The notes: generated by a model not told the origin, from the sequence alone. A stretch of DNA of 64,000 bases from IMGVR_UViG_3300032287_003113:155880-219879; one strand, 5' to 3'; numbered from the stretch's first letter, positions 1,911-64,000 are shown. Program-made: numbers and translations.

Positions 1911-2788
1911 CAAGATTCTTTGCCTTCGGGTGCTCCTTTACTAACTCTAAAAATCCTACTTGGGCTGACATAGTGGCGCACGAGTACAACCATTACCAAA
2001 ACTGGGGACAGGCTGGTGCAGGTAATAGTTTTATATTCTACAGTCTAATGGAATGTAACAAGCGTAATCAGATTACTCCGGACGATGTAGTAATGATCAT
2101 GTGGAGCAGCATTGGTAGAGAAGATCGTTATGTTGGAGGAGAATGGTTGACTCCTGGTAGTATATACAATCAACAAGATTATGATGAGAACTTTGTAAAG
2201 AAGTTTACAGATCCAACAGGATACTTGTTACGAGATGCAGCACACTTGGCTGGTGCTAAAGCCATATTAGATAATATTGGGTGTCGGTATTATTTTTTTA
2301 GTATTGTTCCGTTTAATGTTCCAGACGATAACGTTTTTAAAATCTTTAGCATAGATAATAAAATATTAAATGTTTATGCTGAAGAATTTCGATCTGTGCG
2401 TCCCAGTGTATACGAAGTTGTCTTTGATCACGACTGGTACAGCCGGGCCGGCATTAAACAAGAAGACAAGCTCAAAGAAGAATACGAAATTAAACGTGGT
2501 AATGATTGGCCCACATGGGATAAGTTTATAATACAAGACTTCGGCGGTGTACCCAAAGATATTAAAGATGAAATAAACAACCAACACGAGTTTACCAACA
2601 GATATTTGCGTAGGTATGACACACATCCAACTCCAGCAGAATATTTAGAATATATCACACGAGTAGCACCAGACATAGAAGTATCCTCTGCCACACAAGA
2701 TTGGGTAGCAACAGTGACTGATAGATTAATCAAACACCAAGACTTAACCAAACTTTGGAAACCTAATAAAAAGCCTGCGAGATTCTAA
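1907..2788 (+). CDS. SGNH/GDSL-like hydrolase or acyltransferase
   Basis: N-terminal FGCSFT, G.AGAGNSFI block, C-terminal DTHP. Confidence 0.5.
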   Translation: MTRFFAFGCSFTNSKNPTWADIVAHEYNHYQNWGQAGAGNSFIFYSLMECNKRNQITPDDVVMIMWSSIGREDRYVGGEWLTPGSIYNQQDYDENFVKKFTDPTGYLLRDAAHLAGAKAILDNIGCRYYFFSIVPFNVPDDNVFKIFSIDNKILNVYAEEFRSVRPSVYEVVFDHDWYSRAGIKQEDKLKEEYEIKRGNDWPTWDKFIIQDFGGVPKDIKDEINNQHEFTNRYLRRYDTHPTPAEYLEYITRVAPDIEVSSATQDWVATVTDRLIKHQDLTKLWKPNKKPARF

Positions 2789-6834: not shown

Positions 6835-8038
6835 CACGATATGTATGTTGCCGTGGGTCAGCATTGAAGCTAGTCCAATGGGCACCACACGTCCTTGCTG
6901 TATGGCATATGATGAGATTACCGATGAGTCAGGCAAGAAGTACGACTTAAACGAAACTAATCTTGAAGTGGCATACCACAGTGAGTATATGCAGGACTTA
7001 CGACGTCAGTTTCGTTGTGGAGAAAAACCTGCAACCTGTAATCGTTGTTGGGAAGAAGAAGCCGCAGGTAGGGACAGTAAACGTATACACAGCCAAGTAA
7101 GATTAAAAGAATTATACAAACAAGTAGACTGGGCTAATGACGATCCTGATCAACTATGGTTTGTTGATTTAAAACTAGGTAACATCTGTAACTTAAAATG
7201 TCGTATATGTGGTTCTTGGTCCAGTAGTAAGTGGGCTGAAGAAGAACTTGCTTACATGCCCAAAGACTTTAACAAAAAAGAGCACATTGCCTACACTTGG
7301 CTACGGCAAGGTGCATGGCCACGCAAGACCACAACCTTCTGGGATAACATGCGTGACTTGTTGCCCAACATCCGGTACTTTGAATTTACCGGTGGCGAGC
7401 CCTGGATGATACAAGAACACTTTGATTTATTACAGTACGCAGTAGATCAAGGATACAGTAAAAATATTGATATACACTACAACACCAATGCTACACAACA
7501 ACCTAGTACTCCACAAATTTTAATGTGGAAAGAGTTTGGCCGAGTTGACATTGCCTTTAGTATTGACAACGTAGGCTCACGTTTTGAATATGAACGCTAC
7601 GGAGCCAATTGGCTATTGGCAAACAAGATCATTGATGATGTGCATTTTACACAGGCTGTCGACGCTCCTAATATTACCACACAGTTATGCTTTACTATCA
7701 ACATACAAAACGTGTATTACCTAGACGAACTACTAGCCTGGGCGGATACAAAAAGATTTGGCGACGTCTATTTTAATATGATGCATAGCCCAGATCACAT
7801 GAGCATACAAATGATGACTCCGGCAGCACAGGAGTTGGTACTAAACAAATTAAAAACAACATTTTGGAAAAATAACAAATATCAACAAGAAATTGATAGT
7901 GTAATTAAATTTATTGAACTTGGCACAGGCAGTGATGGCCGAGAGTTTTTGTTTAAGATGCAACGTACAGATGAACATCGCAAACAAAACTTTATGGATA
8001 CACATGAAGAAATAGCACGGGCAATGGGTTATGAATAA
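6821..8038 (+). CDS. Radical SAM protein with N-terminal twitch-like domain
   Basis: N-term CMLPW..PCC..CNRCW; core CNLKCRIC-GSWSSSKW; TGGEP; YNTN. Confidence 0.85.
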   Translation: MNLPNTICMLPWVSIEASPMGTTRPCCMAYDEITDESGKKYDLNETNLEVAYHSEYMQDLRRQFRCGEKPATCNRCWEEEAAGRDSKRIHSQVRLKELYKQVDWANDDPDQLWFVDLKLGNICNLKCRICGSWSSSKWAEEELAYMPKDFNKKEHIAYTWLRQGAWPRKTTTFWDNMRDLLPNIRYFEFTGGEPWMIQEHFDLLQYAVDQGYSKNIDIHYNTNATQQPSTPQILMWKEFGRVDIAFSIDNVGSRFEYERYGANWLLANKIIDDVHFTQAVDAPNITTQLCFTINIQNVYYLDELLAWADTKRFGDVYFNMMHSPDHMSIQMMTPAAQELVLNKLKTTFWKNNKYQQEIDSVIKFIELGTGSDGREFLFKMQRTDEHRKQNFMDTHEEIARAMGYE

Positions 8039-9338
8039 ACCGGCAACACTATGCATGGCACCATGGACACACACTTATCTTAGTCCACAAACAGAACGAC
8101 GCTTGTGCTGTGCCAGCCGTGAACCTGCACAAAACTTTGAACAGTATATAGATACATCGGCCGGCACAGGACGATACATTCCCATCACATTAGATGAGCA
8201 TTGGAACAGTGAACACATGCGTAGTGTGCGCCGTAGAATGATGGCTGGAGAAACCTTGCCCGAGTGTGAAGTGTGTAACAACAAACTATTAAACACAGAC
8301 GTTTACCGTAGTTATTTTAATCAATTGTTTGGAGATAAGTATTTACAGGCCCGAGAGCATACTGATGCAACAGGCTACACGACAATGAAGCCAGTTTCGT
8401 GGGATTACAGGTTCAGCAATCTCTGTAATTTTAAATGCCGCATGTGCGGCGACATGTTGTCGAGTGCTTGGGAGAGCGAGCAACGCCAACACGGAATGAT
8501 CGACTTTACAAATCCAAAGAACAATTGGATGCGTCCTGAAGTCAAAGAGCAAATAGAACAGTTTCAAGACACCCAGATAGAGCAAGAGTTTGCAGATGCC
8601 GTGGAACAGCATCGAGTCGAGGAAGTCTACTGGGTTGGTGGTGAACCGTTGATGTATGAGCAACACTGGCGCTATATGCAACGGATAATTGAATTGGGAG
8701 ATGGACCAAATGTTTACGCTCGATACAACACTAATCTTAGTCGTATTAGTTATAGAGGCGTTAATTTGTTTAGCGATATTTTATGCCGGTTACGTGACTG
8801 GCAAATCTGTGCAAGCATCGACGGCACGGGCAGAATTGGAGAGTATATTAGATCAGGTCTTGATTTTGATCAGTGGCTTGCGAACATCCGCCAAGGACTT
8901 GCGTACCACCATCACCGCCGCCAGATCCGTCTGGACTTCACTCTTACTACACCAGGACTCTTTGAAGTACAAGCGATACAAACGCTCGCCCAAGAACTCG
9001 GAGTAGATGTTTTAGCAAAGGTGGTGTTCTCGTTTAGTCCGGACATCATTATGAGCCCGTTGGCACTACCTAAAGATGTACTGCATCCTTGGATAGACGA
9101 AATTGTGAATGGCACTCCTGGGGAACGTCCTCTTACCGGCCCGTTACGGGACATACTGATTCAACTCAAAACAAGACCCACTTTTGCCGAACAATGGCCT
9201 GACTCGTATCAAGCAGGCCTACGCAAGGGCAAACAACGAATTCTACAGTTGGAAAAAATCAGAAACGACACATATACGTTTAGAGATATAATGTACTCGA
9301 GACCTGCGGCACTAGAATGGTATGACTCAATCAATTAA
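8031..9338 (+). CDS. Radical SAM protein with N-terminal twitch-like domain
   Basis: N-term CMAPW..LCC..CEVC; core CNFKCRMC-GDMLSSAW; VGGEP; YNTN. Confidence 0.85.
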   Translation: MNKPATLCMAPWTHTYLSPQTERRLCCASREPAQNFEQYIDTSAGTGRYIPITLDEHWNSEHMRSVRRRMMAGETLPECEVCNNKLLNTDVYRSYFNQLFGDKYLQAREHTDATGYTTMKPVSWDYRFSNLCNFKCRMCGDMLSSAWESEQRQHGMIDFTNPKNNWMRPEVKEQIEQFQDTQIEQEFADAVEQHRVEEVYWVGGEPLMYEQHWRYMQRIIELGDGPNVYARYNTNLSRISYRGVNLFSDILCRLRDWQICASIDGTGRIGEYIRSGLDFDQWLANIRQGLAYHHHRRQIRLDFTLTTPGLFEVQAIQTLAQELGVDVLAKVVFSFSPDIIMSPLALPKDVLHPWIDEIVNGTPGERPLTGPLRDILIQLKTRPTFAEQWPDSYQAGLRKGKQRILQLEKIRNDTYTFRDIMYSRPAALEWYDSIN

Positions 9339-11896: not shown

Positions 11897-12521
11897 TTTT
11901 ACAGCAGGTGCAGAATTACCCAATCCTGCAGAATCTGCTTGGCCCAACCTAATAGGAAAATTAAATAATCGTCCAGTAAAAAATTTGGGACTTGGCGGCG
12001 CATCCAATGATCGTACATTTAGATTGGTTATAGAGGAAACTGCTCAACAACGATTTGATTTGGTTGTTATACAGTGGACTGAACCTAGTCGTATGGAAAT
12101 ATGGAATGCCCGCCGCCGCAATACCATGGATGTAAATATAGGAAAGTTGCATTCAAACATGTTTGAGATGTCTTGGCTCGATACTTACTATTGCAATCAC
12201 TACGATGATTTCCACGCTCATCGTAAATGGGCCGCACAGATATTGTCCTTGCAAGGATATTTAAAATCAATCGATCAGCCCTATGTTATGGTCAGTTTAA
12301 ATGGACTTGATCAAAGACTTTACACGGGTGCATGGAGTAGTGTAAAATACTTGTGGGACGGTGTTGACACCATGCATTACCCAGGTTGGCCGTTTGAGGG
12401 AATTTATATGTGGCAAGGTGATTGTCCTAGAGCTCCCGGCGGGCATCCATTGGAGCTGGGACACAAAAGAATAGCAGAAAAAATAAATGAGCATATTAGG
12501 AATCTCGGCTGGCTTCCATGA
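11871..12521 (+). CDS. SGNH/GDSL-like hydrolase or acyltransferase (tandem paralog of 11252..11896)
   Basis: VGCSFT, GLGGASN, C-terminal GGHPLELGH. Confidence 0.55.
   Translation: MSILAVGCSFTAGAELPNPAESAWPNLIGKLNNRPVKNLGLGGASNDRTFRLVIEETAQQRFDLVVIQWTEPSRMEIWNARRRNTMDVNIGKLHSNMFEMSWLDTYYCNHYDDFHAHRKWAAQILSLQGYLKSIDQPYVMVSLNGLDQRLYTGAWSSVKYLWDGVDTMHYPGWPFEGIYMWQGDCPRAPGGHPLELGHKRIAEKINEHIRNLGWLP
12471..12499 (+). repeat. 29-nt dual-coding junction repeat, copy 2
   Basis: ATAGCAGAAAAAATAAATGAGCATATTAG. Confidence 0.85.
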
Positions 12522-13968
12522 CGCCGCCATTTCGTTAATTAACTCCGATGGAGAAATAGTATTTGCTGGGCATTCAGAACGCTACAGCAAACGTAAGAAC
12601 GATCCAAATCTTTGTATTAGCCTATTAGAAGAGATATGCGATTACCCCATTGATACTATCGCATACTATGAACGACCCTGGAACAAACAATTACGTCAAT
12701 TGTACAGTGGGCAAGGAATAGAGTGGAACAAACTTTTTGTTAAACAAATTGTTCGGGATCAATTGCATGGCTGGTTGGCGCATCCTCCTAAAAACATAAA
12801 AACTTATAATCATCATTTGAGTCACGCCGCAGCAGGATTCCAAACAAGTGTGTTTGACAAAGCCACAGTGGTAGTAATTGATGCCATTGGGGAATGGGAC
12901 ACTATTAGTATTTGGGGTGCTCACTATGTGGATGGTCAGGCCAAATATCACAGACTGTGGGGACAGCGGTATCCACATAGTGTTGGACTGTTTTATTCAG
13001 CAATGACTCAGCGTGTGGGACTAAAACCCAACGAAGAAGAGTACATATTAATGGGCATGAGTGCATATGGCAAAGATAATGTTGCTGACGTTATAAAAAA
13101 TGCTGTAATTAACAATGAGTGGGATTTGACTTTTAAACAAAATTTACACACTGGCGTTGACACGGAGTTTTTACGTGGAATCTCAGACATGGATATTGCC
13201 ACATCTAGCCAGGCTTTTACAGAAAATCTGATATATAATGTTATGCGTCGAGCCAAAGACTTTGGCTGGAGCAGAAATTTGGTTTACATGGGCGGAGTTG
13301 CCCTAAATTGTTTAGCTAATCGTAATCTTGGTGATTATTTTGAAAAAATTTGGATCATGCCTAATCCTGGTGACGCTGGTAGCAGTCTTGGCGCCGCTGC
13401 CCTTGCCTACGGTAAAAGAATTGACTTCAACAACGCATACCTTGGTCACTGCATTAGCGGCGACTATCCCGTCAATGCCATCCTTGATTGTTTACTCCAC
13501 GATAAAATCGTTGGAGTTGCTTCCGGCCGAGCCGAATTTGGACCTCGTGCCCTTGGGAACAGAAGTCTCCTCGCCGATCCGCGTGGATCAGATATAAAAG
13601 ATCGTGTCAACCAAATCAAACGTCGTCAAAAGTTTAGGCCATTTGCGCCGGTTATCTTGGCTGAGCAAGCTGAGTTATTTTTTGATATGCCCCGTGGTTT
13701 CAGTGATAGTCCATATATGCAGTCAGTCGCCCATTGCCGGCATCCTGACACTTACCCTGCTATTGTGCATCACGACGGCACTAGCCGAGTACAAACGGTT
13801 ACAGATAATGGCTCAGGCATTAGAGAACTCCTAGAAAAATGGTATGTAATGACCGGCTGTCCCATGTTGCTCAACACCAGTCTCAACATTAGAGGTGAAC
13901 CCATGGTCAACGATCGTGCCGACGCAGATAGATTTGAACACTTATATGGAGTACGTGTATGCTCGTGA
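12487..13968 (+). CDS. Carbamoyltransferase, NodU/CmcH family
   Basis: GISAGFHDAA, ERYSKRK, HHLSHAA, DAIGE, GGVALNC, GDAGSSLGAA, EFGPRALGNRS, RPFAP, LNTSLN. Confidence 0.9.
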   Translation: MSILGISAGFHDAAISLINSDGEIVFAGHSERYSKRKNDPNLCISLLEEICDYPIDTIAYYERPWNKQLRQLYSGQGIEWNKLFVKQIVRDQLHGWLAHPPKNIKTYNHHLSHAAAGFQTSVFDKATVVVIDAIGEWDTISIWGAHYVDGQAKYHRLWGQRYPHSVGLFYSAMTQRVGLKPNEEEYILMGMSAYGKDNVADVIKNAVINNEWDLTFKQNLHTGVDTEFLRGISDMDIATSSQAFTENLIYNVMRRAKDFGWSRNLVYMGGVALNCLANRNLGDYFEKIWIMPNPGDAGSSLGAAALAYGKRIDFNNAYLGHCISGDYPVNAILDCLLHDKIVGVASGRAEFGPRALGNRSLLADPRGSDIKDRVNQIKRRQKFRPFAPVILAEQAELFFDMPRGFSDSPYMQSVAHCRHPDTYPAIVHHDGTSRVQTVTDNGSGIRELLEKWYVMTGCPMLLNTSLNIRGEPMVNDRADADRFEHLYGVRVCS

Positions 13969-51342: not shown

Positions 51343-52443
51343 TTATGCCTTGAGCATGTTAATAAGATTAGGGAAAGTTTTTGTAAAATCTAAATTTCTG
51401 CGTTTATCTATTGTGTTTAACGAGTATACAACATTGTCTATATTTTTGTCAAATGGTTTGGTAAGAAATTCTGCACAATTATGTAAACTGTTGCCAAATG
51501 TTGTGTTTGGATTATATCTATTTAGATCGCTGATTAAATCACCTAAAATTTTATCACCAAAATTTCTAGCGTCCAAATATTTTGGTTGTGTCAAGTAATG
51601 TACTGCTGTGCGATCAATATCTACGCCCAAATCAATAAGATATTCCCCAGTTTCAACAATGTTGGTAGAGAGCAAGAAATAATTCATTGTTACACCAATT
51701 TTCTCCTGGGGCCATTGTTGAATCAATTGTCGAAGGTTCGTTTCAAACTCCGACCATACTCCTGGATGCCTGATATACTCAAATTGAGCACCTGTGGCTT
51801 CAACACTGATTTCCCATTGCACATTGTTAAACTGTTTTATTTTAGAATAAATTCCAGTTTTTAAATTTGAAAGATTAGTGGTGATGCGTACCAAGCAATC
51901 AGGATTGGCCGCATATAATCGATCCAACAGTTCGCCATTTTCTTTAATCATCAACGGTTCGCCGCCGGCCAAGTATACTTCTTGAAGCCCCGCCAGTTTA
52001 TCGTGTGTGTAATCTTTCAATTGATCAAATGTGGAACGATCGGCATTGACAGTTTGTCCCATTTCAGCCGCCCACAAACTGCTAAAGTATGGACCACAAT
52101 AAACACAGGCATAGTTACAGACGTTTGACCAGCGTAGATCCAGTTGTGTCAGTTTATGCGTACCATCGTAATCAATGTCAACGTCCTTGTGTAATTTGAG
52201 CTGGTATGCTCGATTACTAAACTCAGGATCTACAGTTTCTCTTTGCTCGCATAGCTGACAGCTTTTGGGCCAGTGACCTGATTTTAAACTGTTTCTTATT
52301 TGTTGATTTTGTGTGTTGTCTAATATTACAGCAATTGGTGAAGATTTTAAGTTGCCCAGGGTTTCTTGGCTCATGGCACAATTTCTAACAGAACCATCGG
52401 GATTAACAGCGACGCCAGTCCACGGAAGCGGACAAGCGATCAT
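51343..52443 (-). CDS. Radical SAM protein with N-terminal twitch-like domain
   Basis: CPLPW..NC..CQLC; core CNYACVYC-GPYFSSLW; AGGEP; start ATG 52443 (ATGA). Confidence 0.85.
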   Translation of the reverse strand: MIACPLPWTGVAVNPDGSVRNCAMSQETLGNLKSSPIAVILDNTQNQQIRNSLKSGHWPKSCQLCEQRETVDPEFSNRAYQLKLHKDVDIDYDGTHKLTQLDLRWSNVCNYACVYCGPYFSSLWAAEMGQTVNADRSTFDQLKDYTHDKLAGLQEVYLAGGEPLMIKENGELLDRLYAANPDCLVRITTNLSNLKTGIYSKIKQFNNVQWEISVEATGAQFEYIRHPGVWSEFETNLRQLIQQWPQEKIGVTMNYFLLSTNIVETGEYLIDLGVDIDRTAVHYLTQPKYLDARNFGDKILGDLISDLNRYNPNTTFGNSLHNCAEFLTKPFDKNIDNVVYSLNTIDKRRNLDFTKTFPNLINMLKA

Positions 52444-52955
52444 TTTATAACTTCGTCTTGTGTGTATTTGGACCAATCCGTAAACTTAGTACGATCCTTT
52501 AAGTCATGTAACTGGTGACACCATACTCCGGGATTGGTTGCTGCAAAGTCTTTGTCATCCAGCTTTATTGTGGCGTTGTATCCCAAAAGTTGCAGATATG
52601 GTAGTTTAACACTGATCATTGGGATGAAATTGTTGTACTCGATCAAACAGCCCTGGGCTAGACCTTCTGCACTAGACACATCCAAATCCAAAGTACACAA
52701 TAGACCTCGTTGTAAACATGAGGTGATCATGCCTTCCCATTCACGCCAAGTATCGCCATCGTCGACGTCAGGATTGGGAAAACTTTGGTTGGCACCAAAA
52801 TAAACATGGTTGCAATTATTGTCCATGACCATATTGATAATAACGCCGGCGTCTTGTACACCAACCACAAATAAAGTTTTATGTCCAAATGCCGGGCTAT
52901 GCTCTACTTCCCGGCCAACAAAGAAATTTACTTGTTCGTGTCCTGCTCTGTTCAT
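52440..52955 (-). CDS. Uncharacterised protein adjacent to the DpdA-like gene
   Basis: G.EVE...G.KTLFVVG, HVYFGAN, NPGVWC; ATGA-coupled to the transglycosylase. Confidence 0.7.
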   Translation of the reverse strand: MNRAGHEQVNFFVGREVEHSPAFGHKTLFVVGVQDAGVIINMVMDNNCNHVYFGANQSFPNPDVDDGDTWREWEGMITSCLQRGLLCTLDLDVSSAEGLAQGCLIEYNNFIPMISVKLPYLQLLGYNATIKLDDKDFAATNPGVWCHQLHDLKDRTKFTDWSKYTQDEVIK

Positions 52956-55922: not shown

Positions 55923-56873
55923 TCAATGGTCTCGTCTTTTTATTTCGCCTAATACCTGATGTGCTTTGACCGTTTCCAGTGTGCCAGGCCGTTTGAGTTC
56001 GATCCAACTGACTGTGGTTCCTTGACCATGTACGTCTTTGATGTAATATACCTCAAAACCCAAACTCTCACACATGGGTATCAACATGCTTTTTGGCATA
56101 TAACTCATCCAAAAACTTTCTGCATAGTTGGCACCGTCGACTAAGTCGCCGTTGTTATAACTAAACATAAAAATGCCACCCGGACGTAACAGTCCCTTGA
56201 CCGATTTTAAATATTCTTTTATAGTATCGAGACTGCGATAGTTTAGGAAATTCCAACAAAATACAAATCCAAATTGTCCCTGAGGCAATGCATCAAAATT
56301 GGTATCTTTGACAAGATATGGTCTTAGTCTGCGTTGATACTCATCTGGAAACTGACTGACTGTAGATTGTAAAAAATCTCTGTAGTGATCAGTGACATAT
56401 AACGGATCAGCAGCCACAATGTGTTTGGTCCACTCACCATCCCGGCATCCAATTTCTAGTGCTGGATATTTCCAATTGGTATTTAATTGTATGCGATTAT
56501 GAATTTCTGTTTGTAAAGATTCAGATAACTCCATCACCCGTAATTTTCGTATGTTGCTCACTGCCTCTTCTTCGACACGCAATTCTAATTCGTAGTTATT
56601 GGTAAACAAGTGAGCCGCTTCCACGTGTATCTGTTGATTTATTTTGTCGATGATGAGATCGAATCGAGACTGACTAAATTGTAAATCCTGGTGTAGTCTA
56701 GTAAAATCTCCAGTCAATTGATGGATTTCTGTTTGTACATCTGCCAATGGCGTTTCGTTGGCAATAGCACCAATGCGATTTTCTAAACTGTTAATACCCA
56801 AGGTAATGTCGTGAGTCGTGTACTCTGATTTTAACAGCTCTCGGATTCGAACAAGTTCGGTTAATTTTTTCAT
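55923..56873 (-). CDS. Class I SAM-dependent methyltransferase with N-terminal coiled coil
   Basis: ALEIGCRDG, FGFVFCWNFLNY, LLRPGGIFMFSY. Confidence 0.75.
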   Translation of the reverse strand: MKKLTELVRIRELLKSEYTTHDITLGINSLENRIGAIANETPLADVQTEIHQLTGDFTRLHQDLQFSQSRFDLIIDKINQQIHVEAAHLFTNNYELELRVEEEAVSNIRKLRVMELSESLQTEIHNRIQLNTNWKYPALEIGCRDGEWTKHIVAADPLYVTDHYRDFLQSTVSQFPDEYQRRLRPYLVKDTNFDALPQGQFGFVFCWNFLNYRSLDTIKEYLKSVKGLLRPGGIFMFSYNNGDLVDGANYAESFWMSYMPKSMLIPMCESLGFEVYYIKDVHGQGTTVSWIELKRPGTLETVKAHQVLGEIKRRDH

Positions 56874-59533
56874 TATTCAAAACTAAACAAATCATCAAAG
56901 GTTGTTTTAATATCTGTTGATTCAGCAATACGCCACTCTAGCACACCCAACAAGTTCTCTACCTTTTGATCCACAATGGTTGATTCCATTGTGCTATCAT
57001 CGAATGGCAAGTCTTTGAACCACTGCGGTATATGAGTTTCGTCTGTGGGATAGCCCACAGACGTATATCCCACTGGATTGTCTTTGAGTTTACACACGAT
57101 GGTTTTCATACCGTCTACGATGGTTGTTGAATAGTTGTCGCCATGCATACGCTTTAGGTTGTTCCAGTTCATTGCGGCTCTAACGTGTCCGGGCATGTTG
57201 GCTTTGCCCAGACGTGCTTCTTCGGCCGCATATTTGGTCAGGTTGTTCACACGTTTGGGTGTGCCTTTTTCCCAGGCTGGTCTGGTAGCAAACAATAACT
57301 TGAATTCTTTGACTTTTTCAATAACAGCTTCTCGGCCGGCACCTGTTAACACATCCATGAGTAGCTCACTCAAGAAGTCTTGTACTACCTTGGGTGTATC
57401 TGATCGCTTGAGATCCAAGCCCATGGCCTTCATCTTGCCTGGCTTGCCGTGTGTGTCTAGTCGCACACCTTCCATGTCAAAGATCAATACACCATAACGT
57501 TTCTTTTTGATAAACAAGCCCTTACTTGCAATAAGTTCACGACCGGCTGCAATAATGGCACCCATCTCTCTAGGACAATGACAAGCACGTTCCATGAATG
57601 CTGGGAAACTGGCATTTACTGAGTCGGCAATGGTATCATATAACTGCACACAGATTTCTCTGCTCCATTCCATGCGACCTGCGGCTACTTCCTCTTTGAT
57701 TTGCGGCCAGGCTGAGAAATAGACCGAGTCCGTGTCGCCGTAGATGATACTTGCGCCAACGTGGTCATACTGGCCGGTAATAGCTTCATTGACGTGTGCG
57801 TCCATGTGCTTTGCAATGATCCGGCCCGTAAGCGTCGTAGATTGGCCAATCCTTTGATCAAAGAAGCGGCAACCCGGGTTAAGGATCGCCCCGTAAAGTG
57901 AGTTAAGGTTAATTTTTTTAACGAGTTGCCGCTTGTCCCAGAACGCTTGATCTTCCTTAGATGTTGCGGTTTTCTTCTTAGCTTGCATTTCCTTACGTTC
58001 AGCATACCATCTCTCCAATAGGCCAGGGATAATACCCTTGACATCATATTTAAATATTGTGCCATTGGCACTCAAAGTCCATGGCTGACGACTGTCAAAT
58101 ATCAAGCGCCATACATCTGCGGCACTCATTACATCCGAACCACCCTGTTCCCAGTCTACAGTAATCTCAGTGCCTGGTTCCATGTTCATCACTGCTTGAT
58201 ACTCTAGGGTACCAAACATGTTTTCCCAGGCATCAGCAAAGCTCGATCCACTCGCCAGCTTTTCTTGGATGTAGTGGTCGGTCATTACAGTTCTTAACTG
58301 ACCAACGACCGTTTCTGGTCCCATGTTAAGAGCACGGATCGCTGACGGGTAGAGACTGTTAAGGTCGATCGCTCCGATGTATTCGTGCATGCCTTTTTTG
58401 GGGTAAGCAACGTAGGCACCTGCCGCTTGTGTGTCACCTTGATCATCTCTGCTTCTCCTGTTAGGTACTACTAGCCCACGGCTGTGAGCCTCATTGATAA
58501 TGGCTTGTTCGGTAACTGCCACAGCACCCATGGTGGTTTGCAGTAGCACAGTATTGTCATGTGCTAGTTCATTAGCCAAGTCTAAGAAGCGTAGTTTCTT
58601 ATCTAACTTGGCAAGAATCATTGTGTCTTGGCGATTGTAGTCAATGAACTTGGGAAAGTCTTTGTTGTACAGTTGATCCAAGGTGCCTTCGTACTGTGTC
58701 TTGCGGTCACCCAGTTCGTATTCGGCAATGGCATCCAGGCTATAACTGTGACGTTCTTCATAAGTGTATTTGCGATACAGTTGCATGTAGTCTAAGTGAA
58801 CACGACCCAGCAAGTCAAAGGTCAAGTTCTCTGCACCAAAGCGTTCAAACACACGTTGCTTGGGCAGTTGCCCCCACAAGCATAATCTACGTGTGTCGTC
58901 CTTGCTGAGAACTCTAGTGATACGCATTGTGGTATAAGGAATATCGAAGCCCTCACTGTTCCATCCCGACAAGATATCTGCATCTTCAATCAGGTCAAGG
59001 AATGTGTTGAGCATGTCCTCTTCTCGTTCAAACAAAAAACAGTTGTCATATTGAGCACAAATTTCTTCAGCAGTTTGCCAACTGTAACTCTTGGGCGGAA
59101 CCACCAGCGTGACCATTTTGTCCATCCAGTCCATGTAGACTGAGACAGCAGTGATAGCGTTAAAGGGATCTTCAGGTTTTGAATAGCCTCTAAGTGGATC
59201 AAAGTCCACCTCAATGTCAAAAAAGGCTGTTTGTAGTTTTGGCGAGTCTACGCCTAGATAATTTTCTTCAAGACAACGGAAGATGGGATTGATATCTGAC
59301 TCCCATAGTCGCTTGTTACCGTTGATGCGTTGCTCTTTGTGGAACTCTTTGCCGTTTTTTGTGGCAAAGCGTGTGACAGGCGTGTCAAAGATTGTGCGGA
59401 ATTTTCCTCTGGGGTCATCGTAGTAGAACACATAGTTGGCCGGATACTCAGTATAAATTCGTTCTCCGTTCACACGTTCTACCACGTGTATGCGATCTTT
59501 GTCGCGATCAAACAATGCATCTATATAACTCAT
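56873..59533 (-). CDS. polB: Family B DNA polymerase with 3'-5' exonuclease
   Basis: FDIEVD, GWNSEGFDIPY, DLNSLYPS, KINLNSLYG, YGDTDS, KKRY; start ATG 59533 (GGAG SD). Confidence 0.97.
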   Translation of the reverse strand: MSYIDALFDRDKDRIHVVERVNGERIYTEYPANYVFYYDDPRGKFRTIFDTPVTRFATKNGKEFHKEQRINGNKRLWESDINPIFRCLEENYLGVDSPKLQTAFFDIEVDFDPLRGYSKPEDPFNAITAVSVYMDWMDKMVTLVVPPKSYSWQTAEEICAQYDNCFLFEREEDMLNTFLDLIEDADILSGWNSEGFDIPYTTMRITRVLSKDDTRRLCLWGQLPKQRVFERFGAENLTFDLLGRVHLDYMQLYRKYTYEERHSYSLDAIAEYELGDRKTQYEGTLDQLYNKDFPKFIDYNRQDTMILAKLDKKLRFLDLANELAHDNTVLLQTTMGAVAVTEQAIINEAHSRGLVVPNRRSRDDQGDTQAAGAYVAYPKKGMHEYIGAIDLNSLYPSAIRALNMGPETVVGQLRTVMTDHYIQEKLASGSSFADAWENMFGTLEYQAVMNMEPGTEITVDWEQGGSDVMSAADVWRLIFDSRQPWTLSANGTIFKYDVKGIIPGLLERWYAERKEMQAKKKTATSKEDQAFWDKRQLVKKINLNSLYGAILNPGCRFFDQRIGQSTTLTGRIIAKHMDAHVNEAITGQYDHVGASIIYGDTDSVYFSAWPQIKEEVAAGRMEWSREICVQLYDTIADSVNASFPAFMERACHCPREMGAIIAAGRELIASKGLFIKKKRYGVLIFDMEGVRLDTHGKPGKMKAMGLDLKRSDTPKVVQDFLSELLMDVLTGAGREAVIEKVKEFKLLFATRPAWEKGTPKRVNNLTKYAAEEARLGKANMPGHVRAAMNWNNLKRMHGDNYSTTIVDGMKTIVCKLKDNPVGYTSVGYPTDETHIPQWFKDLPFDDSTMESTIVDQKVENLLGVLEWRIAESTDIKTTFDDLFSFE

Positions 59534-59540
59534 AACTCTC

Positions 59541-59592
59541 CAATGTGTGCCGCTTTGAGCCGACACTTGCTCTACATGCTGATTAAGTCAGC
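59541..59592 (-). promoter_or_regulatory. Two hairpins in the polymerase 5' leader (translational operator candidate)
   Basis: GCUGA/UCAGC hairpin and a CAAGUGU.../...ACACAUUG hairpin ending at the GGAG SD. Confidence 0.4.
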
Positions 59593-59602
59593 GACTCTGT
59601 AT

Positions 59603-59631
59603 ATTATACTATCTTACTTATCGTTTAGCAA
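59603..59631 (-). promoter_or_regulatory. Sigma70 promoter for the polymerase
   Basis: TTGCTA-17-TATAAT. Confidence 0.65.
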
Positions 59632-60139
59632 GAGCAATATCAAAAGAAATTGCCCGTCGTGTGCCAACAAATTCACATTTTGGAACCGAATGTCTAATAT
59701 GACTGGGCCATATTAAAAGCATGCCTGCTGTGGGATTTATGATATGTATTTTGGTATCATTGTGAAACTGTATCGGTCCAGATCCTGTGGGAATTTCTAC
59801 ATAGTAAGTACCGCTGAAATGGCATTCATCGTGCTGATGTGGAGCATGACACAACTCAGCAGTCATAGCAAACGGCCAGATGCCAATCAGCACTGACCGT
59901 TGGGAAAAATTATTATATTGTTGTTGTAAAAATATATTAACGTGGGTGTTGATAAAATTTACAAATGGATTATTTTGATACAGTTGATCAATTTGATCAA
60001 TGTTGTTGGCATTTCTTAGACCACGTAGTTCGTTAGTCCAATTTAAATCTGCTGTGCCATTGAACCAAGACTGTGCATAGTTTACAAAATCTTGATCCTG
60101 ACATTCGTACAACCAGTCATCAAACACCTGATGCAACAT
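59618..60139 (-). CDS. 2OG-Fe(II) oxygenase-like protein (TIGR02466-type)
   Basis: PHQHDECHFSGTYYV...PTAGMLLIWPSHIRHSV...R.AISF. Confidence 0.65.
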   Translation of the reverse strand: MLHQVFDDWLYECQDQDFVNYAQSWFNGTADLNWTNELRGLRNANNIDQIDQLYQNNPFVNFINTHVNIFLQQQYNNFSQRSVLIGIWPFAMTAELCHAPHQHDECHFSGTYYVEIPTGSGPIQFHNDTKIHIINPTAGMLLIWPSHIRHSVPKCEFVGTRRAISFDIALAKR

Positions 60140-60873: not shown

Positions 60874-61516
60874 TCGGTTTAATTTCTGATTTTTCGTACA
60901 TGACTGTGTCAGTGTCACCCAGGGCCCATTTGGCGTCTGTTTCCACACTCCATCTACGAGTGGCCACACGAAAGTCTGGCTGTTTGAGTTCTCGAGGATT
61001 GCTACTGGGTTCTAATATGATTAGTCTGTTGTTGGGTTGTGCGGCAAACTGTCCGTTATTACAGCGTATGAAATTGTAGCTCTTGTGATCTTCCACATCC
61101 TCTGAGAAGCCAGTATCAAGTGTGTTAAAGTCTGGATGTGCTGAGTCCACAGTAAACATGTATTCGCCTGACATCCAGGCTCCATTCTTGAGTTTGAACT
61201 TGCAACGCATACTTTGTAGTTGTGCTTTTTTGATCACAGTGATATCGTAACTGAGACAGTCCCATAACTGTAGGTAATCCAACGGTAGTGGTTCACCCTC
61301 TATGGGTTTCCAGCAGTAGGCATGTAAGGGTAGCTTGTCATAGAGTGCACCATACTGGTTGAGATAGCTTTCAATACGAAATGCTTGACCACGCAGGCTT
61401 TTGATTGACACCCACCACACAGGTTCTAATTCACCGTGACCTTGCTCAAAATCATACAAAAACTCTCTACGAACAAAACATTTTACAGCGGGTAAGTTAG
61501 CTACTATGTGACTCAT
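60860..61516 (-). CDS. Hypothetical protein
   Basis: 218-aa ATGA-coupled ORF. Confidence 0.7.
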   Translation of the reverse strand: MSHIVANLPAVKCFVRREFLYDFEQGHGELEPVWWVSIKSLRGQAFRIESYLNQYGALYDKLPLHAYCWKPIEGEPLPLDYLQLWDCLSYDITVIKKAQLQSMRCKFKLKNGAWMSGEYMFTVDSAHPDFNTLDTGFSEDVEDHKSYNFIRCNNGQFAAQPNNRLIILEPSSNPRELKQPDFRVATRRWSVETDAKWALGDTDTVMYEKSEIKPNTLP

Positions 61517-62289
61517 TCACAGTTCCAACGACGTCGTGCCTTGCAAATAGCTTTGTCTGGAGTTTTAGCACACGAAATGTTGTGCATGTTCATTTGACCC
61601 TTGCTACGTGAGCAATAGCTCTTACGACGTTTTGAGGCTTTGCCGCCCTTCTTTAACTTGCTGGGTTTAGTAGTCACAGCAGTCTTTAATTTTGAACCTG
61701 GATTTTCTCTACGATAGGCTTTGACAGCTTTGCGACTCATGCCATCTGTTCGATCTTTCTTATTGGCCTTTTGCCAATCTTCCATAACTGGAACAGTAGT
61801 TGCAAACACATACAATTCATCATCAGTTAAACTCTCTAGGTCTTCCCAGATCACTTCTGAGTCTACGCCATTGCGTTCAGCGAGATTGTCGATGATTGAT
61901 TCAATAAGATCAAACTCTTCATTTACTGTATCAACTATACCGTTTTCATGTTGACTAATCATATAGTCCATAACATTAACAATCATTCCTTTGGCTTGTG
62001 CTATCTTAGCTTGGCACCACTCTGGCAAATTTTCATCATCATGTATAGCTTTTTCTAAATGGGTACTAACTCTTTGAATAGTTTGTAGATCATTTTTAAA
62101 CATGCCGGCTTCGTCGTTATATTCTCTATCGAAGTTTTCGTCTACGCTTTCAGCTGGCACACAGTTGTTGACTCTAACTCCGCCCTTGACCTTGGTCTTG
62201 GGGTTGCCAATCTTCTTGCCCTTCCAACACTTGGGATCCAAGCGTGTTTTGGTAGCTTTAGCTTCTGTTATAAATTCATTAGATTTCAT
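61513..62289 (-). CDS. Modular basic/acidic protein, probable virion-internal precursor
   Basis: MKSNEFITE leader; modules bounded by hydrophobic-x-E; CWKG..NCVP and RRKSYC..RRRWNC modules; start ATG 62289. Confidence 0.55.
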   Translation of the reverse strand: MKSNEFITEAKATKTRLDPKCWKGKKIGNPKTKVKGGVRVNNCVPAESVDENFDREYNDEAGMFKNDLQTIQRVSTHLEKAIHDDENLPEWCQAKIAQAKGMIVNVMDYMISQHENGIVDTVNEEFDLIESIIDNLAERNGVDSEVIWEDLESLTDDELYVFATTVPVMEDWQKANKKDRTDGMSRKAVKAYRRENPGSKLKTAVTTKPSKLKKGGKASKRRKSYCSRSKGQMNMHNISCAKTPDKAICKARRRWNCE

Positions 62290-63356
62290 TTTTTCTTTCC
62301 TGATTTCATGTTGGCACACCAGTGGTACATCTTGGCACGTTCACCCGATGCATTCTTTGCTTTCTTACGTAAACTAGTCACACTTCCCGAACAACTGGCA
62401 CCTGCACGTTTTACACGACCCGGGCGACTTTTACCTTTTACTTTACCGTCGTGAAAGTTTTCGGCCATACCACCGCCATCTCCACCTTCACCGCCAGTGC
62501 TGTCCGATGTACCCCACCAAGGATATCCAACATAGTAACCGCCACGAGACTTGCGTTTCTTTTTGCGTGCCTCGGCTACATTGTAAGTTGGGTCTGTTTT
62601 TTGACGCGGCATTCCCTTGGGTTGTTTAGGGTCAACAGGATCAATATCGGTTGTGGTAAGACCAGTTTTCTTTAGGGCATCAATGTACTTGTGTTCCTCT
62701 TCCTCACTGCCAAACGAAAAAATAGTACTGGGAGGACCCTTGCCAAAGTCATGTTTGCCTAGCCCTTTAAGATTTGCAATGTGCGTTCCAAGTTTGTACC
62801 AATCATACACATCTGATACGTCTACTCTCACAGTACCTGCTGGCATAGTAGGTTTAAACTCAGGGCCGGGTGGCGGGCCATTAGGATCGTAATCTTCGTC
62901 TAGGAATGTGTCGGCCAGTCGTTTACACAACTCACGCAGTTTTTCATTGCCGGTTTCAATGCTGTCATCACCTTCCTGTGTGGGATCTTTGTATCCCGAG
63001 TACACATGTTCAATGCCGTATTCAGCAATTAGGGCTTCGCAACTTTCTCCTGACCGTTCATCCATGGGACGATTGCAAGGACTTAGCGTAGTAACAATGA
63101 TACATTCTGACGTAACGTTGTCACAACGTTCTAAGGCAGCACGTTCTGCGTGTACTCTACGTCCATTCGGGGCTTGGTAGTTGACGCCGTAGACAAGTTG
63201 ACCGTCGGGACATACCACACAGGCTCCAACCATGCCGTAAAACTCTGAGTCGGCGGCCTGGCCGTTGAGCACTATCTCGCAACAACGTGCCAGTATGCTA
63301 TCTAATTCTTCTCTAGGATCGTTAGACGGGGCTGTAAGGATTTCTTGGATTATCAC
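62286..63356 (-). CDS. Modular protein with an N-terminal RibD-like zinc deaminase domain
   Basis: VGACVV..G, HAERAAL, TLSPC-x11-C-EALI..GI..V; followed by low-complexity and basic modules. Confidence 0.7.
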   Translation of the reverse strand: MIIQEILTAPSNDPREELDSILARCCEIVLNGQAADSEFYGMVGACVVCPDGQLVYGVNYQAPNGRRVHAERAALERCDNVTSECIIVTTLSPCNRPMDERSGESCEALIAEYGIEHVYSGYKDPTQEGDDSIETGNEKLRELCKRLADTFLDEDYDPNGPPPGPEFKPTMPAGTVRVDVSDVYDWYKLGTHIANLKGLGKHDFGKGPPSTIFSFGSEEEEHKYIDALKKTGLTTTDIDPVDPKQPKGMPRQKTDPTYNVAEARKKKRKSRGGYYVGYPWWGTSDSTGGEGGDGGGMAENFHDGKVKGKSRPGRVKRAGASCSGSVTSLRKKAKNASGERAKMYHWCANMKSGKKK

Positions 63357-63408
63357 TGTTGTCGCCTTCGGCTTGTTCGGGGTATACTGGATATTCGTTT
63401 GGGTTCAT
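63322..63408 (-). CDS. 28-aa acidic Pro/Tyr-rich peptide MNPNEYPVYPEQAEGDNSDNPRNPYSPV (not in ORF track)
   Basis: ATG overlaps the upstream TGA (ATGA); fills the 63356-63405 gap. Confidence 0.55.
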   Translation of the reverse strand: MNPNEYPVYPEQAEGDNSDNPRNPYSPV

Positions 63409-63893
63409 TTGTCTTGCCCAAAGTATTCTGGATTGGCACTGGCAAAGTCACGCATCACAATACCAGCATTGGCATTGGCTTCGTTTTCTTCGTCGGTGCC
63501 AGTGTCACCAGAGTTTGCATCCAACTGCCCAGCCAAATTTTGTTTGTGATGAGTGAGTTCGTGTGCCAGAGTACGCAACACATCAATGGGATGGCGTCCG
63601 GCAGTGACCAGATACAAACAGTTGTTGTCGGCATCGTATGTGCCAAAGCTGGTGTTCATTGGCTGGTCTAGCAATTCTATTTCAGGTAGTTGTTCAATGC
63701 CAAGTTGTTCAGCCACCCATGGAGCAAATTTATGAACAAAGTTGTTGACTGTATGCTCTTCAGATTCATTCTTTTTACGACCCGCACAGTGAGCCCGTTG
63801 ACTAAACCCTTTGGGGTTGGCACAGTTGATAGAGCTTTTGTATTTCTGGCTCCACTTTTCATTTAGGGGTGAAAAAACTTCGCTGATTTTCAT
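63405..63893 (-). CDS. Modular protein with a C-terminal zincin (HExxH) metallopeptidase-like domain
   Basis: MKISE leader; INC.NPKGFSQRAHC module; LAHELTH...ENEANA; start ATG 63893. Confidence 0.65.
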   Translation of the reverse strand: MKISEVFSPLNEKWSQKYKSSINCANPKGFSQRAHCAGRKKNESEEHTVNNFVHKFAPWVAEQLGIEQLPEIELLDQPMNTSFGTYDADNNCLYLVTAGRHPIDVLRTLAHELTHHKQNLAGQLDANSGDTGTDEENEANANAGIVMRDFASANPEYFGQDK

Positions 63894-64000
63894 TTTGCTG
63901 TGGCACGAAGCATCCAACTATGTTTTCTATGAGCATCCATGCGTTCCGCAAGGAAATTGCTGAAACCATGCTCGCCTGCCGCTTCAGCAACATCATAAAC
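63890..64000 (-). CDS. C-terminal fragment of a Dps/ferritin-like protein (runs off the window)
   Basis: VYDVAEAAGEHGFSNFLAERMDAHRKHSWMLRATAK*, Dps-type terminal helix ending xxWML. Confidence 0.55.
   Translation of the reverse strand, partial: VYDVAEAAGEHGFSNFLAERMDAHRKHSWMLRATAK

What the first reader, a model, noticed from the sequence alone, without database searches (positions are those of the whole stretch)
62890..63356. Intact RibD-like zinc deaminase domain as cargo in a probable virion polyprotein
HAE...TLSPC-x11-C keeps all catalytic residues, lacks the RibD reductase domain and is flanked by putative cleavage sites (IQE, FLDE). A deaminase delivered with the genome could edit nucleotides, signalling molecules or RNA at the start of infection, as anti-defence or pool remodelling (inference). 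The neighbouring gene similarly carries an HExxH peptidase.
Basis: partly seen in the sequence, partly recalled or inferred. Interest (0 to 1): 0.6.

Follow-up and report, generated by a model that had tools for sequence, protein, structure and literature searches.

The report
Deaminase cargo module in jumbo phage
A freshwater giant phage carries an intact zinc deaminase joined to portable leader, linker and tail modules that resemble phage T4's system for loading proteins into its head, so the enzyme may be delivered with the DNA, though this is unproven.

Summary
Window 62890-63356 (- strand) encodes residues 1-155 of a 356-aa ORF (62286..63356). It is an intact cytidine-deaminase-fold zinc domain: HAE and PC-x11-C are invariant in 102 relatives, and RibD deaminase domains are its nearest relatives. 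It has no reductase domain.

It is not RibD. It is also not the phage's ordinary dCMP deaminase, which lies elsewhere on the contig.

The host is an uncultured freshwater T4-superfamily jumbo phage with its own gp21-type prohead protease and gp23-type capsid protein.

The protein is not part of one polyprotein spanning its neighbours; the three genes are separate. Each is a mosaic of modules that are shuffled among more than 4,500 relatives: deaminase, a small alpha/beta domain, a basic/Gly linker, basic tails and an HExxH zincin. Relatives carry GNAT, chitinase, nucleotidase or pterin dehydratase domains instead of the deaminase.

Many family members start with leaders close to the T4 capsid-targeting sequence. 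The downstream gene starts MKSNEFITE|A. Module junctions end in hydrophobic-x-Glu, which matches gp21-type cleavage sites.

Virion delivery is therefore plausible (about 0.45) but unproven, and the substrate is unknown. I rate it a new variant of known kinds (T4 internal proteins, polyvalent proteins).

The parts
62286..63356 (-). Whole gene (P0001, 356 aa plus stop), GTG start preceded by GAAGG. It is a mosaic precursor: leader, deaminase, modB, modC, modD.
63342..63356 (-). N-terminal leader residues 1-5 (M/V-I-I-Q-E), the start of a roughly 10-residue appendage outside the fold. It resembles the CTS-like leaders of relatives but lacks Glu at position 9-10.
   Evidence: pLDDT below 50 for residues 1-10; column counts; leaders of relatives
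62895..63341 (-). Zinc deaminase domain (residues 6-154, core 13-150), ending in T-F-L-D-E.
   Evidence: Pfam 41.4 bits; model and fold matches; F151 100%, L/I152 100%, E154 74%
63144..63152 (-). H69-A70-E71: zinc ligand and catalytic Glu.
   Evidence: invariant in 102 sequences
63039..63080 (-). P93-C94...C106 zinc loop (C-x11-C) with invariant R101 and G103.
   Evidence: RibD has a shorter C-x8-C loop carrying Lys79 (alignments; PMC8256712)
62574..62894 (-). modB (residues 155-261): a conserved small beta-alpha-beta-alpha-beta domain of unknown function. It ends in Y-N-V-A-E and is shared with non-deaminase proteins.
   Evidence: no Pfam or PDB match
62460..62573 (-). modC (residues 262-299): a basic run followed by an aromatic/Gly-rich disordered linker, ending in G-G-G-M-A-E.
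   Evidence: pLDDT below 50
62289..62459 (-). modD (residues 300-356): a very basic (pI 10.9) helical tail beginning N-F-x-D-G-K. It is always preceded by Glu.
63405..63893 (-). Upstream gene (P0002 read from its ATG, 162 aa): leader ending L-N-E, a basic two-Cys module, then a minimal HExxH zincin domain. HExxH is at 63549-63563, with a Glu-rich helix about 25 residues later.
   Evidence: adjacent or fused to the deaminase in most related loci
63322..63408 (-). Conserved 28-codon small ORF. Its ATG overlaps the TGA of the HExxH gene, and it runs 35 nt (11 complete deaminase codons) into the deaminase ORF.
   Evidence: in 11 related loci the spacer lengths are all multiples of 3 and the substitutions are synonymous in this frame
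61513..62289 (-). Downstream gene (P0003 read from its ATG, 258 aa), joined by an ATGA overlap to the deaminase stop. It has a T4-like leader M-K-S-N-E-F-I-T-E|A, a basic two-Cys module, an acidic middle and a C-terminal DUF6321 (61525-61758).
63890..64000 (-). C-terminal end of a Dps/ferritin-like gene cut by the contig end. It flanks the cluster, with its stop overlapping the start of the HExxH gene.
   Evidence: identical tail in L008 9042-9476; PF00210 at the same position in L002 and L003

Best explanation
**Shown**
- The ORF is a mosaic accessory protein of an uncultured freshwater T4-superfamily jumbo phage.
- Its order is: a short N-terminal leader, an intact RibD-like zinc deaminase domain, a small alpha/beta domain, a disordered basic/Gly linker and a very basic helical tail.
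- These modules, and those of the two flanking genes (a minimal HExxH zincin and a DUF6321 protein), are shuffled in many orders among thousands of relatives. Some relatives carry other enzyme heads instead of the deaminase.

**Inferred**
- The three genes encode head-internal proteins of the T4 IP/Alt type.
- A leader like the T4 capsid-targeting sequence takes them into the prohead core.
- The phage's gp21-type protease cuts after hydrophobic-x-Glu at the module junctions. In this protein those are LDE154, VAE261 and MAE299, and possibly IQE5.
- That would free a deaminase of about 16 kDa and small basic peptides, which lie with the DNA and enter the cell with it.
- The deaminase most likely acts on a free ribose-phosphate-bearing pyrimidine or guanine-like nucleotide, not on riboflavin synthesis and not on polynucleotides. 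It would remodel a host nucleotide pool or a nucleotide signal at the start of infection.
For: **Domain is intact**
- Pfam match, invariant catalytic residues, confident model and fold matches.

**RibD-like features**
- Best profile hit is RibD 2hxv at 3.2e-7, against 3.6e-4 for the next family.
- NCBIfam's best hit is RibD.
- It has a long Cys-Cys loop.
- D124-P125 align with BsRibG Asp101-Pro102, which bind the ribose hydroxyls (PMC8256712).
- R101 in the zinc loop is invariant.

**Second deaminase, accessory gene**
- A conventional dCMP deaminase lies at G000:C1:29715-30062.
- The deaminase is absent from two near-complete relatives that carry the tail modules.

**Module shuffling**
-.

**T4 head machinery**
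- Peptidase_S77 at 1.7e-25 and Gp23 at 3.8e-99 in the same genome.
- The protease is present in 4 of 5 large related records.

**Leaders**
- The T4 IPII/IPIII leader was read directly from the T4 record.
- P0003's leader is the only strict match among 1,904 ATG starts of the contig.
- A strict CTS-like pattern fits 37 of 206 family N-termini against 4 of 2,353 control starts. A loose pattern fits 143 of 206 against 79 of 2,353.

**Junctions**
- Glu precedes modD in 150 of 150 distinct contexts, with a hydrophobic residue at P3 in 89% (background 26%).
- Glu precedes the basic Cys module in 44 of 44 contexts, with P3 hydrophobic in 95%.
- The P3 residue comes from three unrelated upstream modules.

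**T4 precedent**
- PMC9026906, PMC9958956 and PMC3012670.

**Structural-gene context in a cultured phage**
- A homologue of the neighbouring gene P0003 lies between the terminase genes in cultured cyanophage B23.
Against: - There is no virion proteome, expression timing or enzyme assay, and no cultured phage carries this protein.
- The locus is syntenic with the replication region (Dps, cluster, DNA polymerase B), not the head genes.
- The deaminase's own leader has Ala/Thr where T4 needs Glu, so only IQE5 could be cut.
- The junction before modB has Glu but no enrichment of hydrophobic residues at P3 (30% against 26%).
- Hydrophobic-x-Glu also occurs three times inside the deaminase fold.
- DUF6321 also occurs in pelagiphage podoviruses, which are not T4-like; their proteases were not examined here.
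- The specificity of this gp21 homologue is unknown.
- Conserved leaders and junctions could simply be recombination cassettes.
- RibD ranks above guanosine deaminase and TadA by less than 1 Z unit, so the substrate class is only weakly inferred.
Confidence: 0.45

Rival explanations
1. It is a cytoplasmic accessory enzyme that is not packaged. The deaminase works inside the infected cell on a nucleotide or nucleotide-like metabolite. The basic tail and other modules tether it to DNA or to a replication compartment. The shared leaders and junctions persist only because they provide homology for modular recombination.
For: - The locus lies in the replication neighbourhood, about 2.7 kb (62286 vs 59566) from DNA polymerase B. 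Nearby genes encode a 2OG oxygenase, a methyltransferase and radical SAM enzymes.
- The tail modules are very basic.
- The other heads in the family are small-molecule enzymes: NT5C, pterin dehydratase and GNAT.
- The leader of this protein lacks the T4 processing Glu.
Against: - This does not explain why three unrelated modules all end in hydrophobic-x-Glu directly before the basic tails.
- It does not explain why the leaders match the T4 capsid-targeting sequence in phages that have T4 head machinery.
Confidence: 0.33
2. It is a split polyvalent-protein system. The HExxH zincin, not the prohead protease, processes the mosaic proteins or acts on host proteins. The set is delivered early, as proposed for polyvalent proteins of phages and conjugative elements.
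For: - The HExxH gene lies directly upstream of the deaminase gene, or is fused to it, in most related loci.
- In some relatives the HExxH domain sits in proteins of 1,200-1,860 aa together with a Pol-beta nucleotidyltransferase and an amidoligase.
- The zincin is the hub domain of polyvalent proteins (PMC5512222).
Against: - The zincin matches are weak (24 bits).
- A Glu at P1 is the hallmark of T4-type prohead proteases, not a known preference of these zincins.
- Membership in the published zincin clades was not tested.
- This rival overlaps with the best explanation rather than excluding it.
Confidence: 0.12
3. It is a nucleic-acid deaminase that edits or mutates host DNA, RNA or tRNA, in the manner of a toxin or editing enzyme.
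For: - TadA and engineered ssDNA-acting TadA variants lie within about 1 Z unit of the best fold match.
- The very basic tail could bind nucleic acid.
Against: - No match to any toxin or editing deaminase family in Pfam at E up to 1.
- Sequence profiles favour RibD by three orders of magnitude.
- The RibD ribose-binding Asp-Pro is conserved.
Confidence: 0.06
4. It is an auxiliary riboflavin-pathway gene, a true RibD deaminase half acting on the pathway intermediate.
For: - The nearest family by sequence and fold is RibD.
- JGI names relatives 'RibD-like'.
Against: - It scores 32 bits against the RibD equivalog cut-off of 156.
- There is no reductase domain in the protein or on the contig.
- The zinc loop differs (x11, no Lys79 equivalent) and Asn103 is replaced by Thr.
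- The gene is patchy among relatives and fused to shuffled non-metabolic modules.
Confidence: 0.04

Closest known systems
Phage T4 internal head proteins IPI, IPII, IPIII and Alt (capsid-targeting sequence plus gp21 processing)
   Same: - The genome has T4-type head machinery (gp21-type protease, gp23-type capsid protein).
- Portable leaders of about 9-10 residues resemble M-K-T-Y-Q-E-F-I-A-E and end in Ile/Leu-x-Glu.
- The payloads behind a conserved leader are diverse and patchily distributed.
- The family includes small basic products.
- Alt gives a precedent for an enzyme as cargo.
   Different: - There are several internal hydrophobic-x-Glu junctions between shuffled modules, not only one N-terminal site.
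- The payloads are small-molecule-type enzymes, including a zinc deaminase.
- This protein's own leader lacks the Glu at the T4 processing position.
- Packaging is not demonstrated.
Polyvalent proteins of phages and conjugative elements (Iyer et al. 2017, PMC5512222)
   Same: - Effector domains are shuffled combinatorially.
- A minimal HExxH zincin is a frequent partner.
- Relatives carry GNAT, ParB-like, lysozyme/chitinase-like and nucleotide-metabolism domains.
- An early-delivery role is predicted.
   Different: - Here the system is largely split into adjacent small genes.
- It has its own set of undescribed linker and tail modules and CTS-like leaders.
- A cytidine-deaminase-type zinc deaminase is not named among the polyvalent-protein domains in the main text of that paper, which was searched by keyword.
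RibD/RibG deaminase domain (riboflavin biosynthesis)
   Same: - Same fold and same HAE and PC...C zinc site.
- It is the best sequence and structure match.
- It has a long loop between the Cys ligands.
- The Asp-Pro that binds the ribose hydroxyls in BsRibG is conserved.
   Different: - No reductase domain.
- The score is far below the equivalog cut-off.
- The loop is x11 with an invariant Arg instead of x8 with Lys79.
- Asn103 is replaced by Thr/Ser.
- The context is a phage accessory locus.
T4 Cd-type dCMP deaminase of T4-like phages
   Same: Both are zinc deaminases of the same superfamily encoded by a T4-superfamily phage.
   Different: - The phage has a separate conventional copy (81 bits to PF00383) elsewhere on the contig.
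- T4 Cd and cyanophage dCMP deaminase rank low in the fold search.
- dCMP deaminases have PCxxC spacing.

Membership tests
Cytidine/deoxycytidylate deaminase superfamily (PF00383) | H(C)xE motif supplying a zinc ligand and the catalytic Glu | tested here: met
   H69-A70-E71 are present and invariant in 102 relatives.
Cytidine/deoxycytidylate deaminase superfamily (PF00383) | PC...C motif supplying two Cys zinc ligands | tested here: met
   P93-C94 and C106 are invariant. The spacing is x11.
Cytidine/deoxycytidylate deaminase superfamily (PF00383) | Score above the curated Pfam cut-off, and the alpha/beta deaminase fold | tested here: met
RibD/RibG bifunctional riboflavin enzyme | Equivalog-level sequence score (TIGR00326 cut-off 156 bits) | tested here: not met
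   32.4 bits, covering the deaminase part only.
RibD/RibG bifunctional riboflavin enzyme | C-terminal RibD_C reductase domain | tested here: not met
   Absent from the protein. No PF01872 match on the 220-kb contig, but the contig is only about half a genome.
RibD/RibG bifunctional riboflavin enzyme | Substrate-binding residues of BsRibG: Lys79 (phosphate), Asp101 and Asn103 (ribose hydroxyls) | tested here: inconclusive
   The Asp101-Pro102 equivalent D124-P125 is conserved in 97-100 of 102 sequences. Asn103 is replaced by Thr/Ser. The zinc loop is longer and has invariant R101 instead of Lys79 (PMC8256712).
RibD/RibG bifunctional riboflavin enzyme | Deamination of the riboflavin pathway intermediate | not testable with these tools
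   This needs an enzyme assay.
T4-type CTS-bearing internal head proteins | T4-type prohead protease and capsid protein in the same genome | tested here: met
   Peptidase_S77 at 1.7e-25 and Gp23 at 3.8e-99. A scaffold-like coiled-coil ORF lies beside them.
T4-type CTS-bearing internal head proteins | N-terminal leader of about 10 residues like that of T4 IPII/IPIII, ending in Ile/Leu-x-Glu | tested here: inconclusive
   - Met for the downstream gene and for 37 of 206 family N-termini under the strict pattern (18%; 143 of 206 under the loose pattern).
- The deaminase protein's own leader is similar but has no Glu at position 9-10, only IQE at 3-5.
T4-type CTS-bearing internal head proteins | Presence in the virion, cleavage by the prohead protease and ejection into the host | not testable with these tools
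   There is no cultured relative and no proteome.
Polyvalent proteins (Iyer et al. 2017) | Several unrelated effector domains combined in variable architectures | tested here: met
   Family-level shuffling is seen with deaminase, zincin, GNAT, ParB-like, chitinase, NT5C, pterin dehydratase, nucleotidyltransferase and amidoligase domains. This particular protein has only one recognisable enzyme domain.
Polyvalent proteins (Iyer et al. 2017) | Zincin-like HExxH metallopeptidase as a partner domain | tested here: inconclusive
   HExxH plus a downstream Glu helix is present. Pfam DUF6647 scores 24.3 against a cut-off of 24.1, and DUF6782 scores 22.4 against 27. Adjacency or fusion is seen in most loci. 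Placement in the published zincin clades was not tested.
T4 Cd-type dCMP deaminase | PCxxC spacing and close similarity to phage or cellular dCMP deaminases | tested here: not met
   The spacing is x11. T4 Cd ranks 33 and cyanophage Cd ranks 47 in Foldseek. A conventional copy lies elsewhere on the contig.
Toxin or editing nucleic-acid deaminases | Match to a toxin, APOBEC or DddA-type deaminase family | tested here: not met
   No such Pfam family matches at E up to 1.

The most novel reading that the evidence does not exclude
Freshwater T4-superfamily jumbo phages use a combinatorial cargo system. It consists of a portable capsid-targeting leader, protease-site cassettes (hydrophobic-x-Glu) and basic tails that stay with the DNA. 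This system loads interchangeable small enzymes into the head and injects them with the genome. The RibD-like deaminase would be the first virion-delivered deaminase. On entry it would destroy or convert a guanine- or cytosine-derived nucleotide, either a defence signal or a pool metabolite.
Probability: 0.3. Interest if true: 0.8.

Novelty: new variant of a known kind. Interest (0 to 1): 0.62.

Why it matters
**If the modules are what they appear to be**
- These phages extend the T4 internal-protein principle into a Lego-like system with many enzyme payloads.
- It would be a natural counterpart of the engineered CTS packaging used in T4 vectors.
- The leaders and junctions would be simple, testable rules for what is loaded and how it is cut.

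**If a deaminase is delivered with the genome**
- It would be a new kind of first-minute host takeover or counter-defence activity.

**If packaging is wrong**
- The family has more than 4,500 clusters at 90% identity, and none has been studied.
- It is still a large uncharacterised deaminase clade, with three undescribed companion modules.

Tried and rejected
**Ideas tested and rejected**
- One polyprotein, or TGA read-through joining the HExxH gene to the deaminase gene. The two ORFs are in the same frame in 11 of 13 loci (counting the window). This is explained by a conserved small ORF in another frame: substitutions are synonymous in that frame and spacer lengths are multiples of 3.
- A T4 late promoter (TATAAATA) as a timing clue. 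It occurs 4 and 5 times on the two strands against about 9 expected, so it is uninformative.
- The idea that the ORF cut by the contig end had a modD-like tail. It is the end of a Dps/ferritin-like gene.

**Searches that found nothing**
- Near-identical DNA and protein matches in cultured phages: none for the deaminase protein.
- A fold for modB-modD: no PDB match at E up to 0.001, and only generic ferredoxin-like resemblances.
- The records behind L002 and L003 are not held for whole-record search.

- Read laying, because the only holders are DNA contigs.
- Complex prediction, because no binding claim is made.

No alternative genetic code was used.

Full report
**1. The observation**

The ORF at 62286..63356 on the minus strand encodes 356 residues.

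- Pfam's cytidine/deoxycytidylate deaminase model scores 41.4 bits against a cut-off of 25.
- In an alignment of 102 non-redundant relatives (37-91% identity), H69, A70, E71, P93, C94 and C106 never vary.
- An AlphaFold model built on that alignment is confident (pLDDT 87.7). Only residues 1-10 and the last three fall outside the fold.

The domain is real and looks catalytically competent.

**2. What kind of deaminase it is**

RibD/RibG deaminase domains are the nearest relatives by every measure.

- A single-sequence search of solved structures finds RibD-type deaminase domains.
- A profile search gives RibD 2hxv at 3.2e-7. The next family (nucleoside, cytosine and tRNA deaminases) starts at 3.6e-4.
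- Foldseek gives E 7.6e-8.
- The structural margin is small: guanosine deaminase scores 14.6, TadA 14.3 and cytosine deaminase 13.7.

Three features argue for a real RibD affinity:
- the long loop between the Cys ligands;
- conservation of D124-P125, which align with Asp101-Pro102 of B. subtilis RibG, where Asp101 binds the ribose hydroxyls (PMC8256712);
- an invariant Arg (R101) in the zinc loop, where RibG has the phosphate-binding Lys79.

It is nonetheless not RibD:
- the RibD equivalog model gives 32 bits against a cut-off of 156;
- there is no reductase domain in the protein or on the contig;
- Asn103 is replaced by Thr/Ser.

It is also not the phage's ordinary dCMP deaminase. A conventional one (81 bits) lies at G000:C1:29715-30062.

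From these residues I infer a substrate that carries ribose and phosphate, meaning a free nucleotide-like molecule. That inference is weak.

**3. The genome**

- The window is the last 64 kb of a 219,879-base IMG/VR record that CheckV estimates to be half a genome.
- The DNA polymerase gene about 2.7 kb downstream (62286 vs 59566) is closest to those of Sinorhizobium phage Phosso (469 kb) and Agrobacterium phage Atu_ph07 (490 kb).
- The contig also encodes a T4 gp21-type prohead protease and a gp23-type capsid protein, with a coiled-coil scaffold-like gene beside them.
- Near-identical DNA occurs in freshwater metagenomes from eight studies.
- No cultured phage has the deaminase protein.

**4. 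The protein is a mosaic**

A word search found about 4,500 relatives. Aligning them shows that the deaminase is one module among several.

Modules in this protein, in order:

| Module | Residues | Description |
|---|---|---|
| Deaminase | 6-154 | Ends in T-F-L-x-E |
| modB | 155-261 | Small beta-alpha-beta-alpha-beta domain with no Pfam or PDB match |
| modC | 262-299 | Disordered basic then Gly/aromatic linker |
| modD | 300-356 | Helical tail, pI 10.9 |

How the modules vary among relatives:
- Relatives place the same modules in other orders.
- They also use the two modules of the upstream gene: a basic two-Cys module and the HExxH domain.
- A search restricted to residues 155-356 shows modB and modD attached to GNAT acetyltransferases, a chitinase-family domain, a 5'-nucleotidase, pterin-4a-carbinolamine dehydratase and many unknown heads.
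- In 80 related viral loci the HExxH gene is almost always directly upstream of the deaminase gene or fused to it.
- In some phages the HExxH domain lies in proteins of 1,200-1,860 residues together with a nucleotidyltransferase and an amidoligase.
- The deaminase itself is dispensable. Two near-complete relatives with modB/modD lack it.

**5. Is it virion cargo?**

*Head machinery.* T4-type head machinery is present in this genome and in four of five large related records.

*Leaders.*
- I read the T4 capsid-targeting sequence directly from the T4 record: M-K-T-Y-Q-E-F-I-A-E, followed by Ala.
- The gene immediately downstream of the deaminase starts at an ATG that overlaps the deaminase stop (ATGA). 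It begins M-K-S-N-E-F-I-T-E followed by Ala.
- That is the only match to a strict T4-like pattern among 1,904 ATG starts on the contig.
- Across the family, N-termini such as M-R-A-Y-E-F-I-A-E are common and are followed directly by one module or another.
- A strict pattern fits 37 of 206 family N-termini against 4 of 2,353 candidate starts in the genome. A loose pattern fits 143 of 206 against 79 of 2,353.

*Junctions.*
- Module junctions carry the signature of T4-type prohead proteases, which cut after Glu with Ile/Leu two residues before. Positions 8 and 10 of the T4 leader control its processing (PMC9026906).
- Glu precedes modD in 150 of 150 distinct contexts, with Val/Leu/Met/Ile/Phe at P3 in 89%. 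The background for all Glu in these proteins is 26%.
- The same holds before the basic two-Cys module (44 of 44, 95%) and before DUF6321 (4 of 4).
- The P3 residue is supplied by three unrelated upstream modules: the last helix of the deaminase (F151 and L/I152 invariant, E154 in 74%), the end of modB, and the only hydrophobic residue in the Gly-rich linker.
- The capsid protein of this phage has a matching L-A-E site in its N-terminal propeptide region.

*Context in a cultured phage.* A homologue of the downstream gene lies between the small and large terminase genes in cultured T4-like cyanophage B23.

**6. What weakens that reading**

- Nothing here shows packaging, cleavage or timing.
- The cluster has conserved synteny in the replication region: Dps-like ferritin, HExxH, small ORF, deaminase, DUF6321 gene, then the DNA polymerase a few genes on.
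- The deaminase protein's own leader (M/V-I-I-Q-E-I-L-T-A) resembles the family leaders but lacks Glu at the T4 processing position.
- The junction before modB has Glu but no enrichment at P3.
- DUF6321 also occurs in podoviruses of Pelagibacter.
- Conserved leaders and junctions could be recombination cassettes rather than functional signals.
- The zincin next door is an alternative processing enzyme, as proposed for polyvalent proteins (PMC5512222).

**7. Corrections to the 'polyprotein' idea**

- The three genes are separate.
- The HExxH and deaminase ORFs are in the same frame, separated by one TGA, in 11 of 13 loci (counting the window).
- The 33-48-nt 'spacer' between them is a conserved small ORF of about 28 codons in another frame. 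It starts at an ATG that overlaps the TGA.
- Substitutions in the spacer are synonymous in that frame, and all indels are multiples of three.
- Read-through is therefore not needed to explain the arrangement, and I did not invoke another genetic code.

**8. Verdict**

- The firm result is a large, unstudied family of mosaic phage proteins. In it, an intact RibD-like deaminase is one interchangeable head.
- The best-supported mechanism is T4-style head loading and gp21-type processing, followed by delivery with the DNA. I put its probability at about 0.45.
- A purely intracellular enzyme is the main rival, at about 0.33.
- Compared with what is known, it works like T4 internal proteins and Alt, and like polyvalent proteins. 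It is not a member of RibD, Cd or toxin deaminase families.
- I rate it a new variant of known kinds, with interest 0.62.

Noticed in passing
window 63322-63408 (-): A conserved small ORF of about 28 codons starts at an ATG overlapping the TGA of the HExxH gene and ends 35 nt (11 complete deaminase codons) inside the deaminase ORF. Eleven related loci keep it, with synonymous substitutions and a Y-P-[VI]-[YWF]-P-E motif. Its function is unknown.
   Followed up: partly
window 1074-9338 (+), also 51343-52476 (-): A tandem array of at least six radical SAM genes, several with a SPASM domain placed N-terminal to the radical SAM core. One more radical SAM/SPASM gene lies near the polymerase. This is an unusual battery for a phage.
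   Followed up: partly
window 12487-13968 (+): A carbamoyltransferase gene (Carbam_trans_N plus Carbam_trans_C, E 1e-38 to 1e-48) lies downstream of the radical SAM array. It may belong to a modification pathway.
   Followed up: no
window 59618-60139 (-) and 55923-56873 (-): A 2OG-Fe(II) oxygenase and a SAM-dependent methyltransferase flank the T4-type DNA polymerase B gene (56873-59566). The polymerase is closest to those of the roughly 470-490-kb phages Phosso and Atu_ph07.
   Followed up: partly
G000:C1 about 64145-64861 (-), outside the window: Two tandem paralogous ORFs (115 and 124 aa) have T4-CTS-like leaders (M-K-I-V-E-I-V-Q-E and M-K-I-T-E-I-I-Q-E). They are further candidates for head-internal proteins of this phage.
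   Followed up: no
G000:C1:29715-30062 (-), outside the window: A conventional dCMP deaminase-type gene (PF00383, 81 bits) shows that the phage has two unrelated zinc deaminases.
   Followed up: partly
L087 3500-4630 (Synechococcus phage B23 gp266): A cultured T4-like cyanophage encodes a homologue of the DUF6321 gene between its small and large terminase genes. DUF6321 there is again preceded by Ile-Val-Glu. DUF6321 also occurs in Pelagibacter podoviruses.
   Followed up: partly
L085 3981-9575, L069 4909-9999, L059 1743-5474: Relatives carry giant proteins of 1,200-1,860 aa directly upstream of a gene bearing modD. These combine the same HExxH domain with an amidoligase and, in L085, a Pol-beta-type nucleotidyltransferase.
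   Followed up: partly
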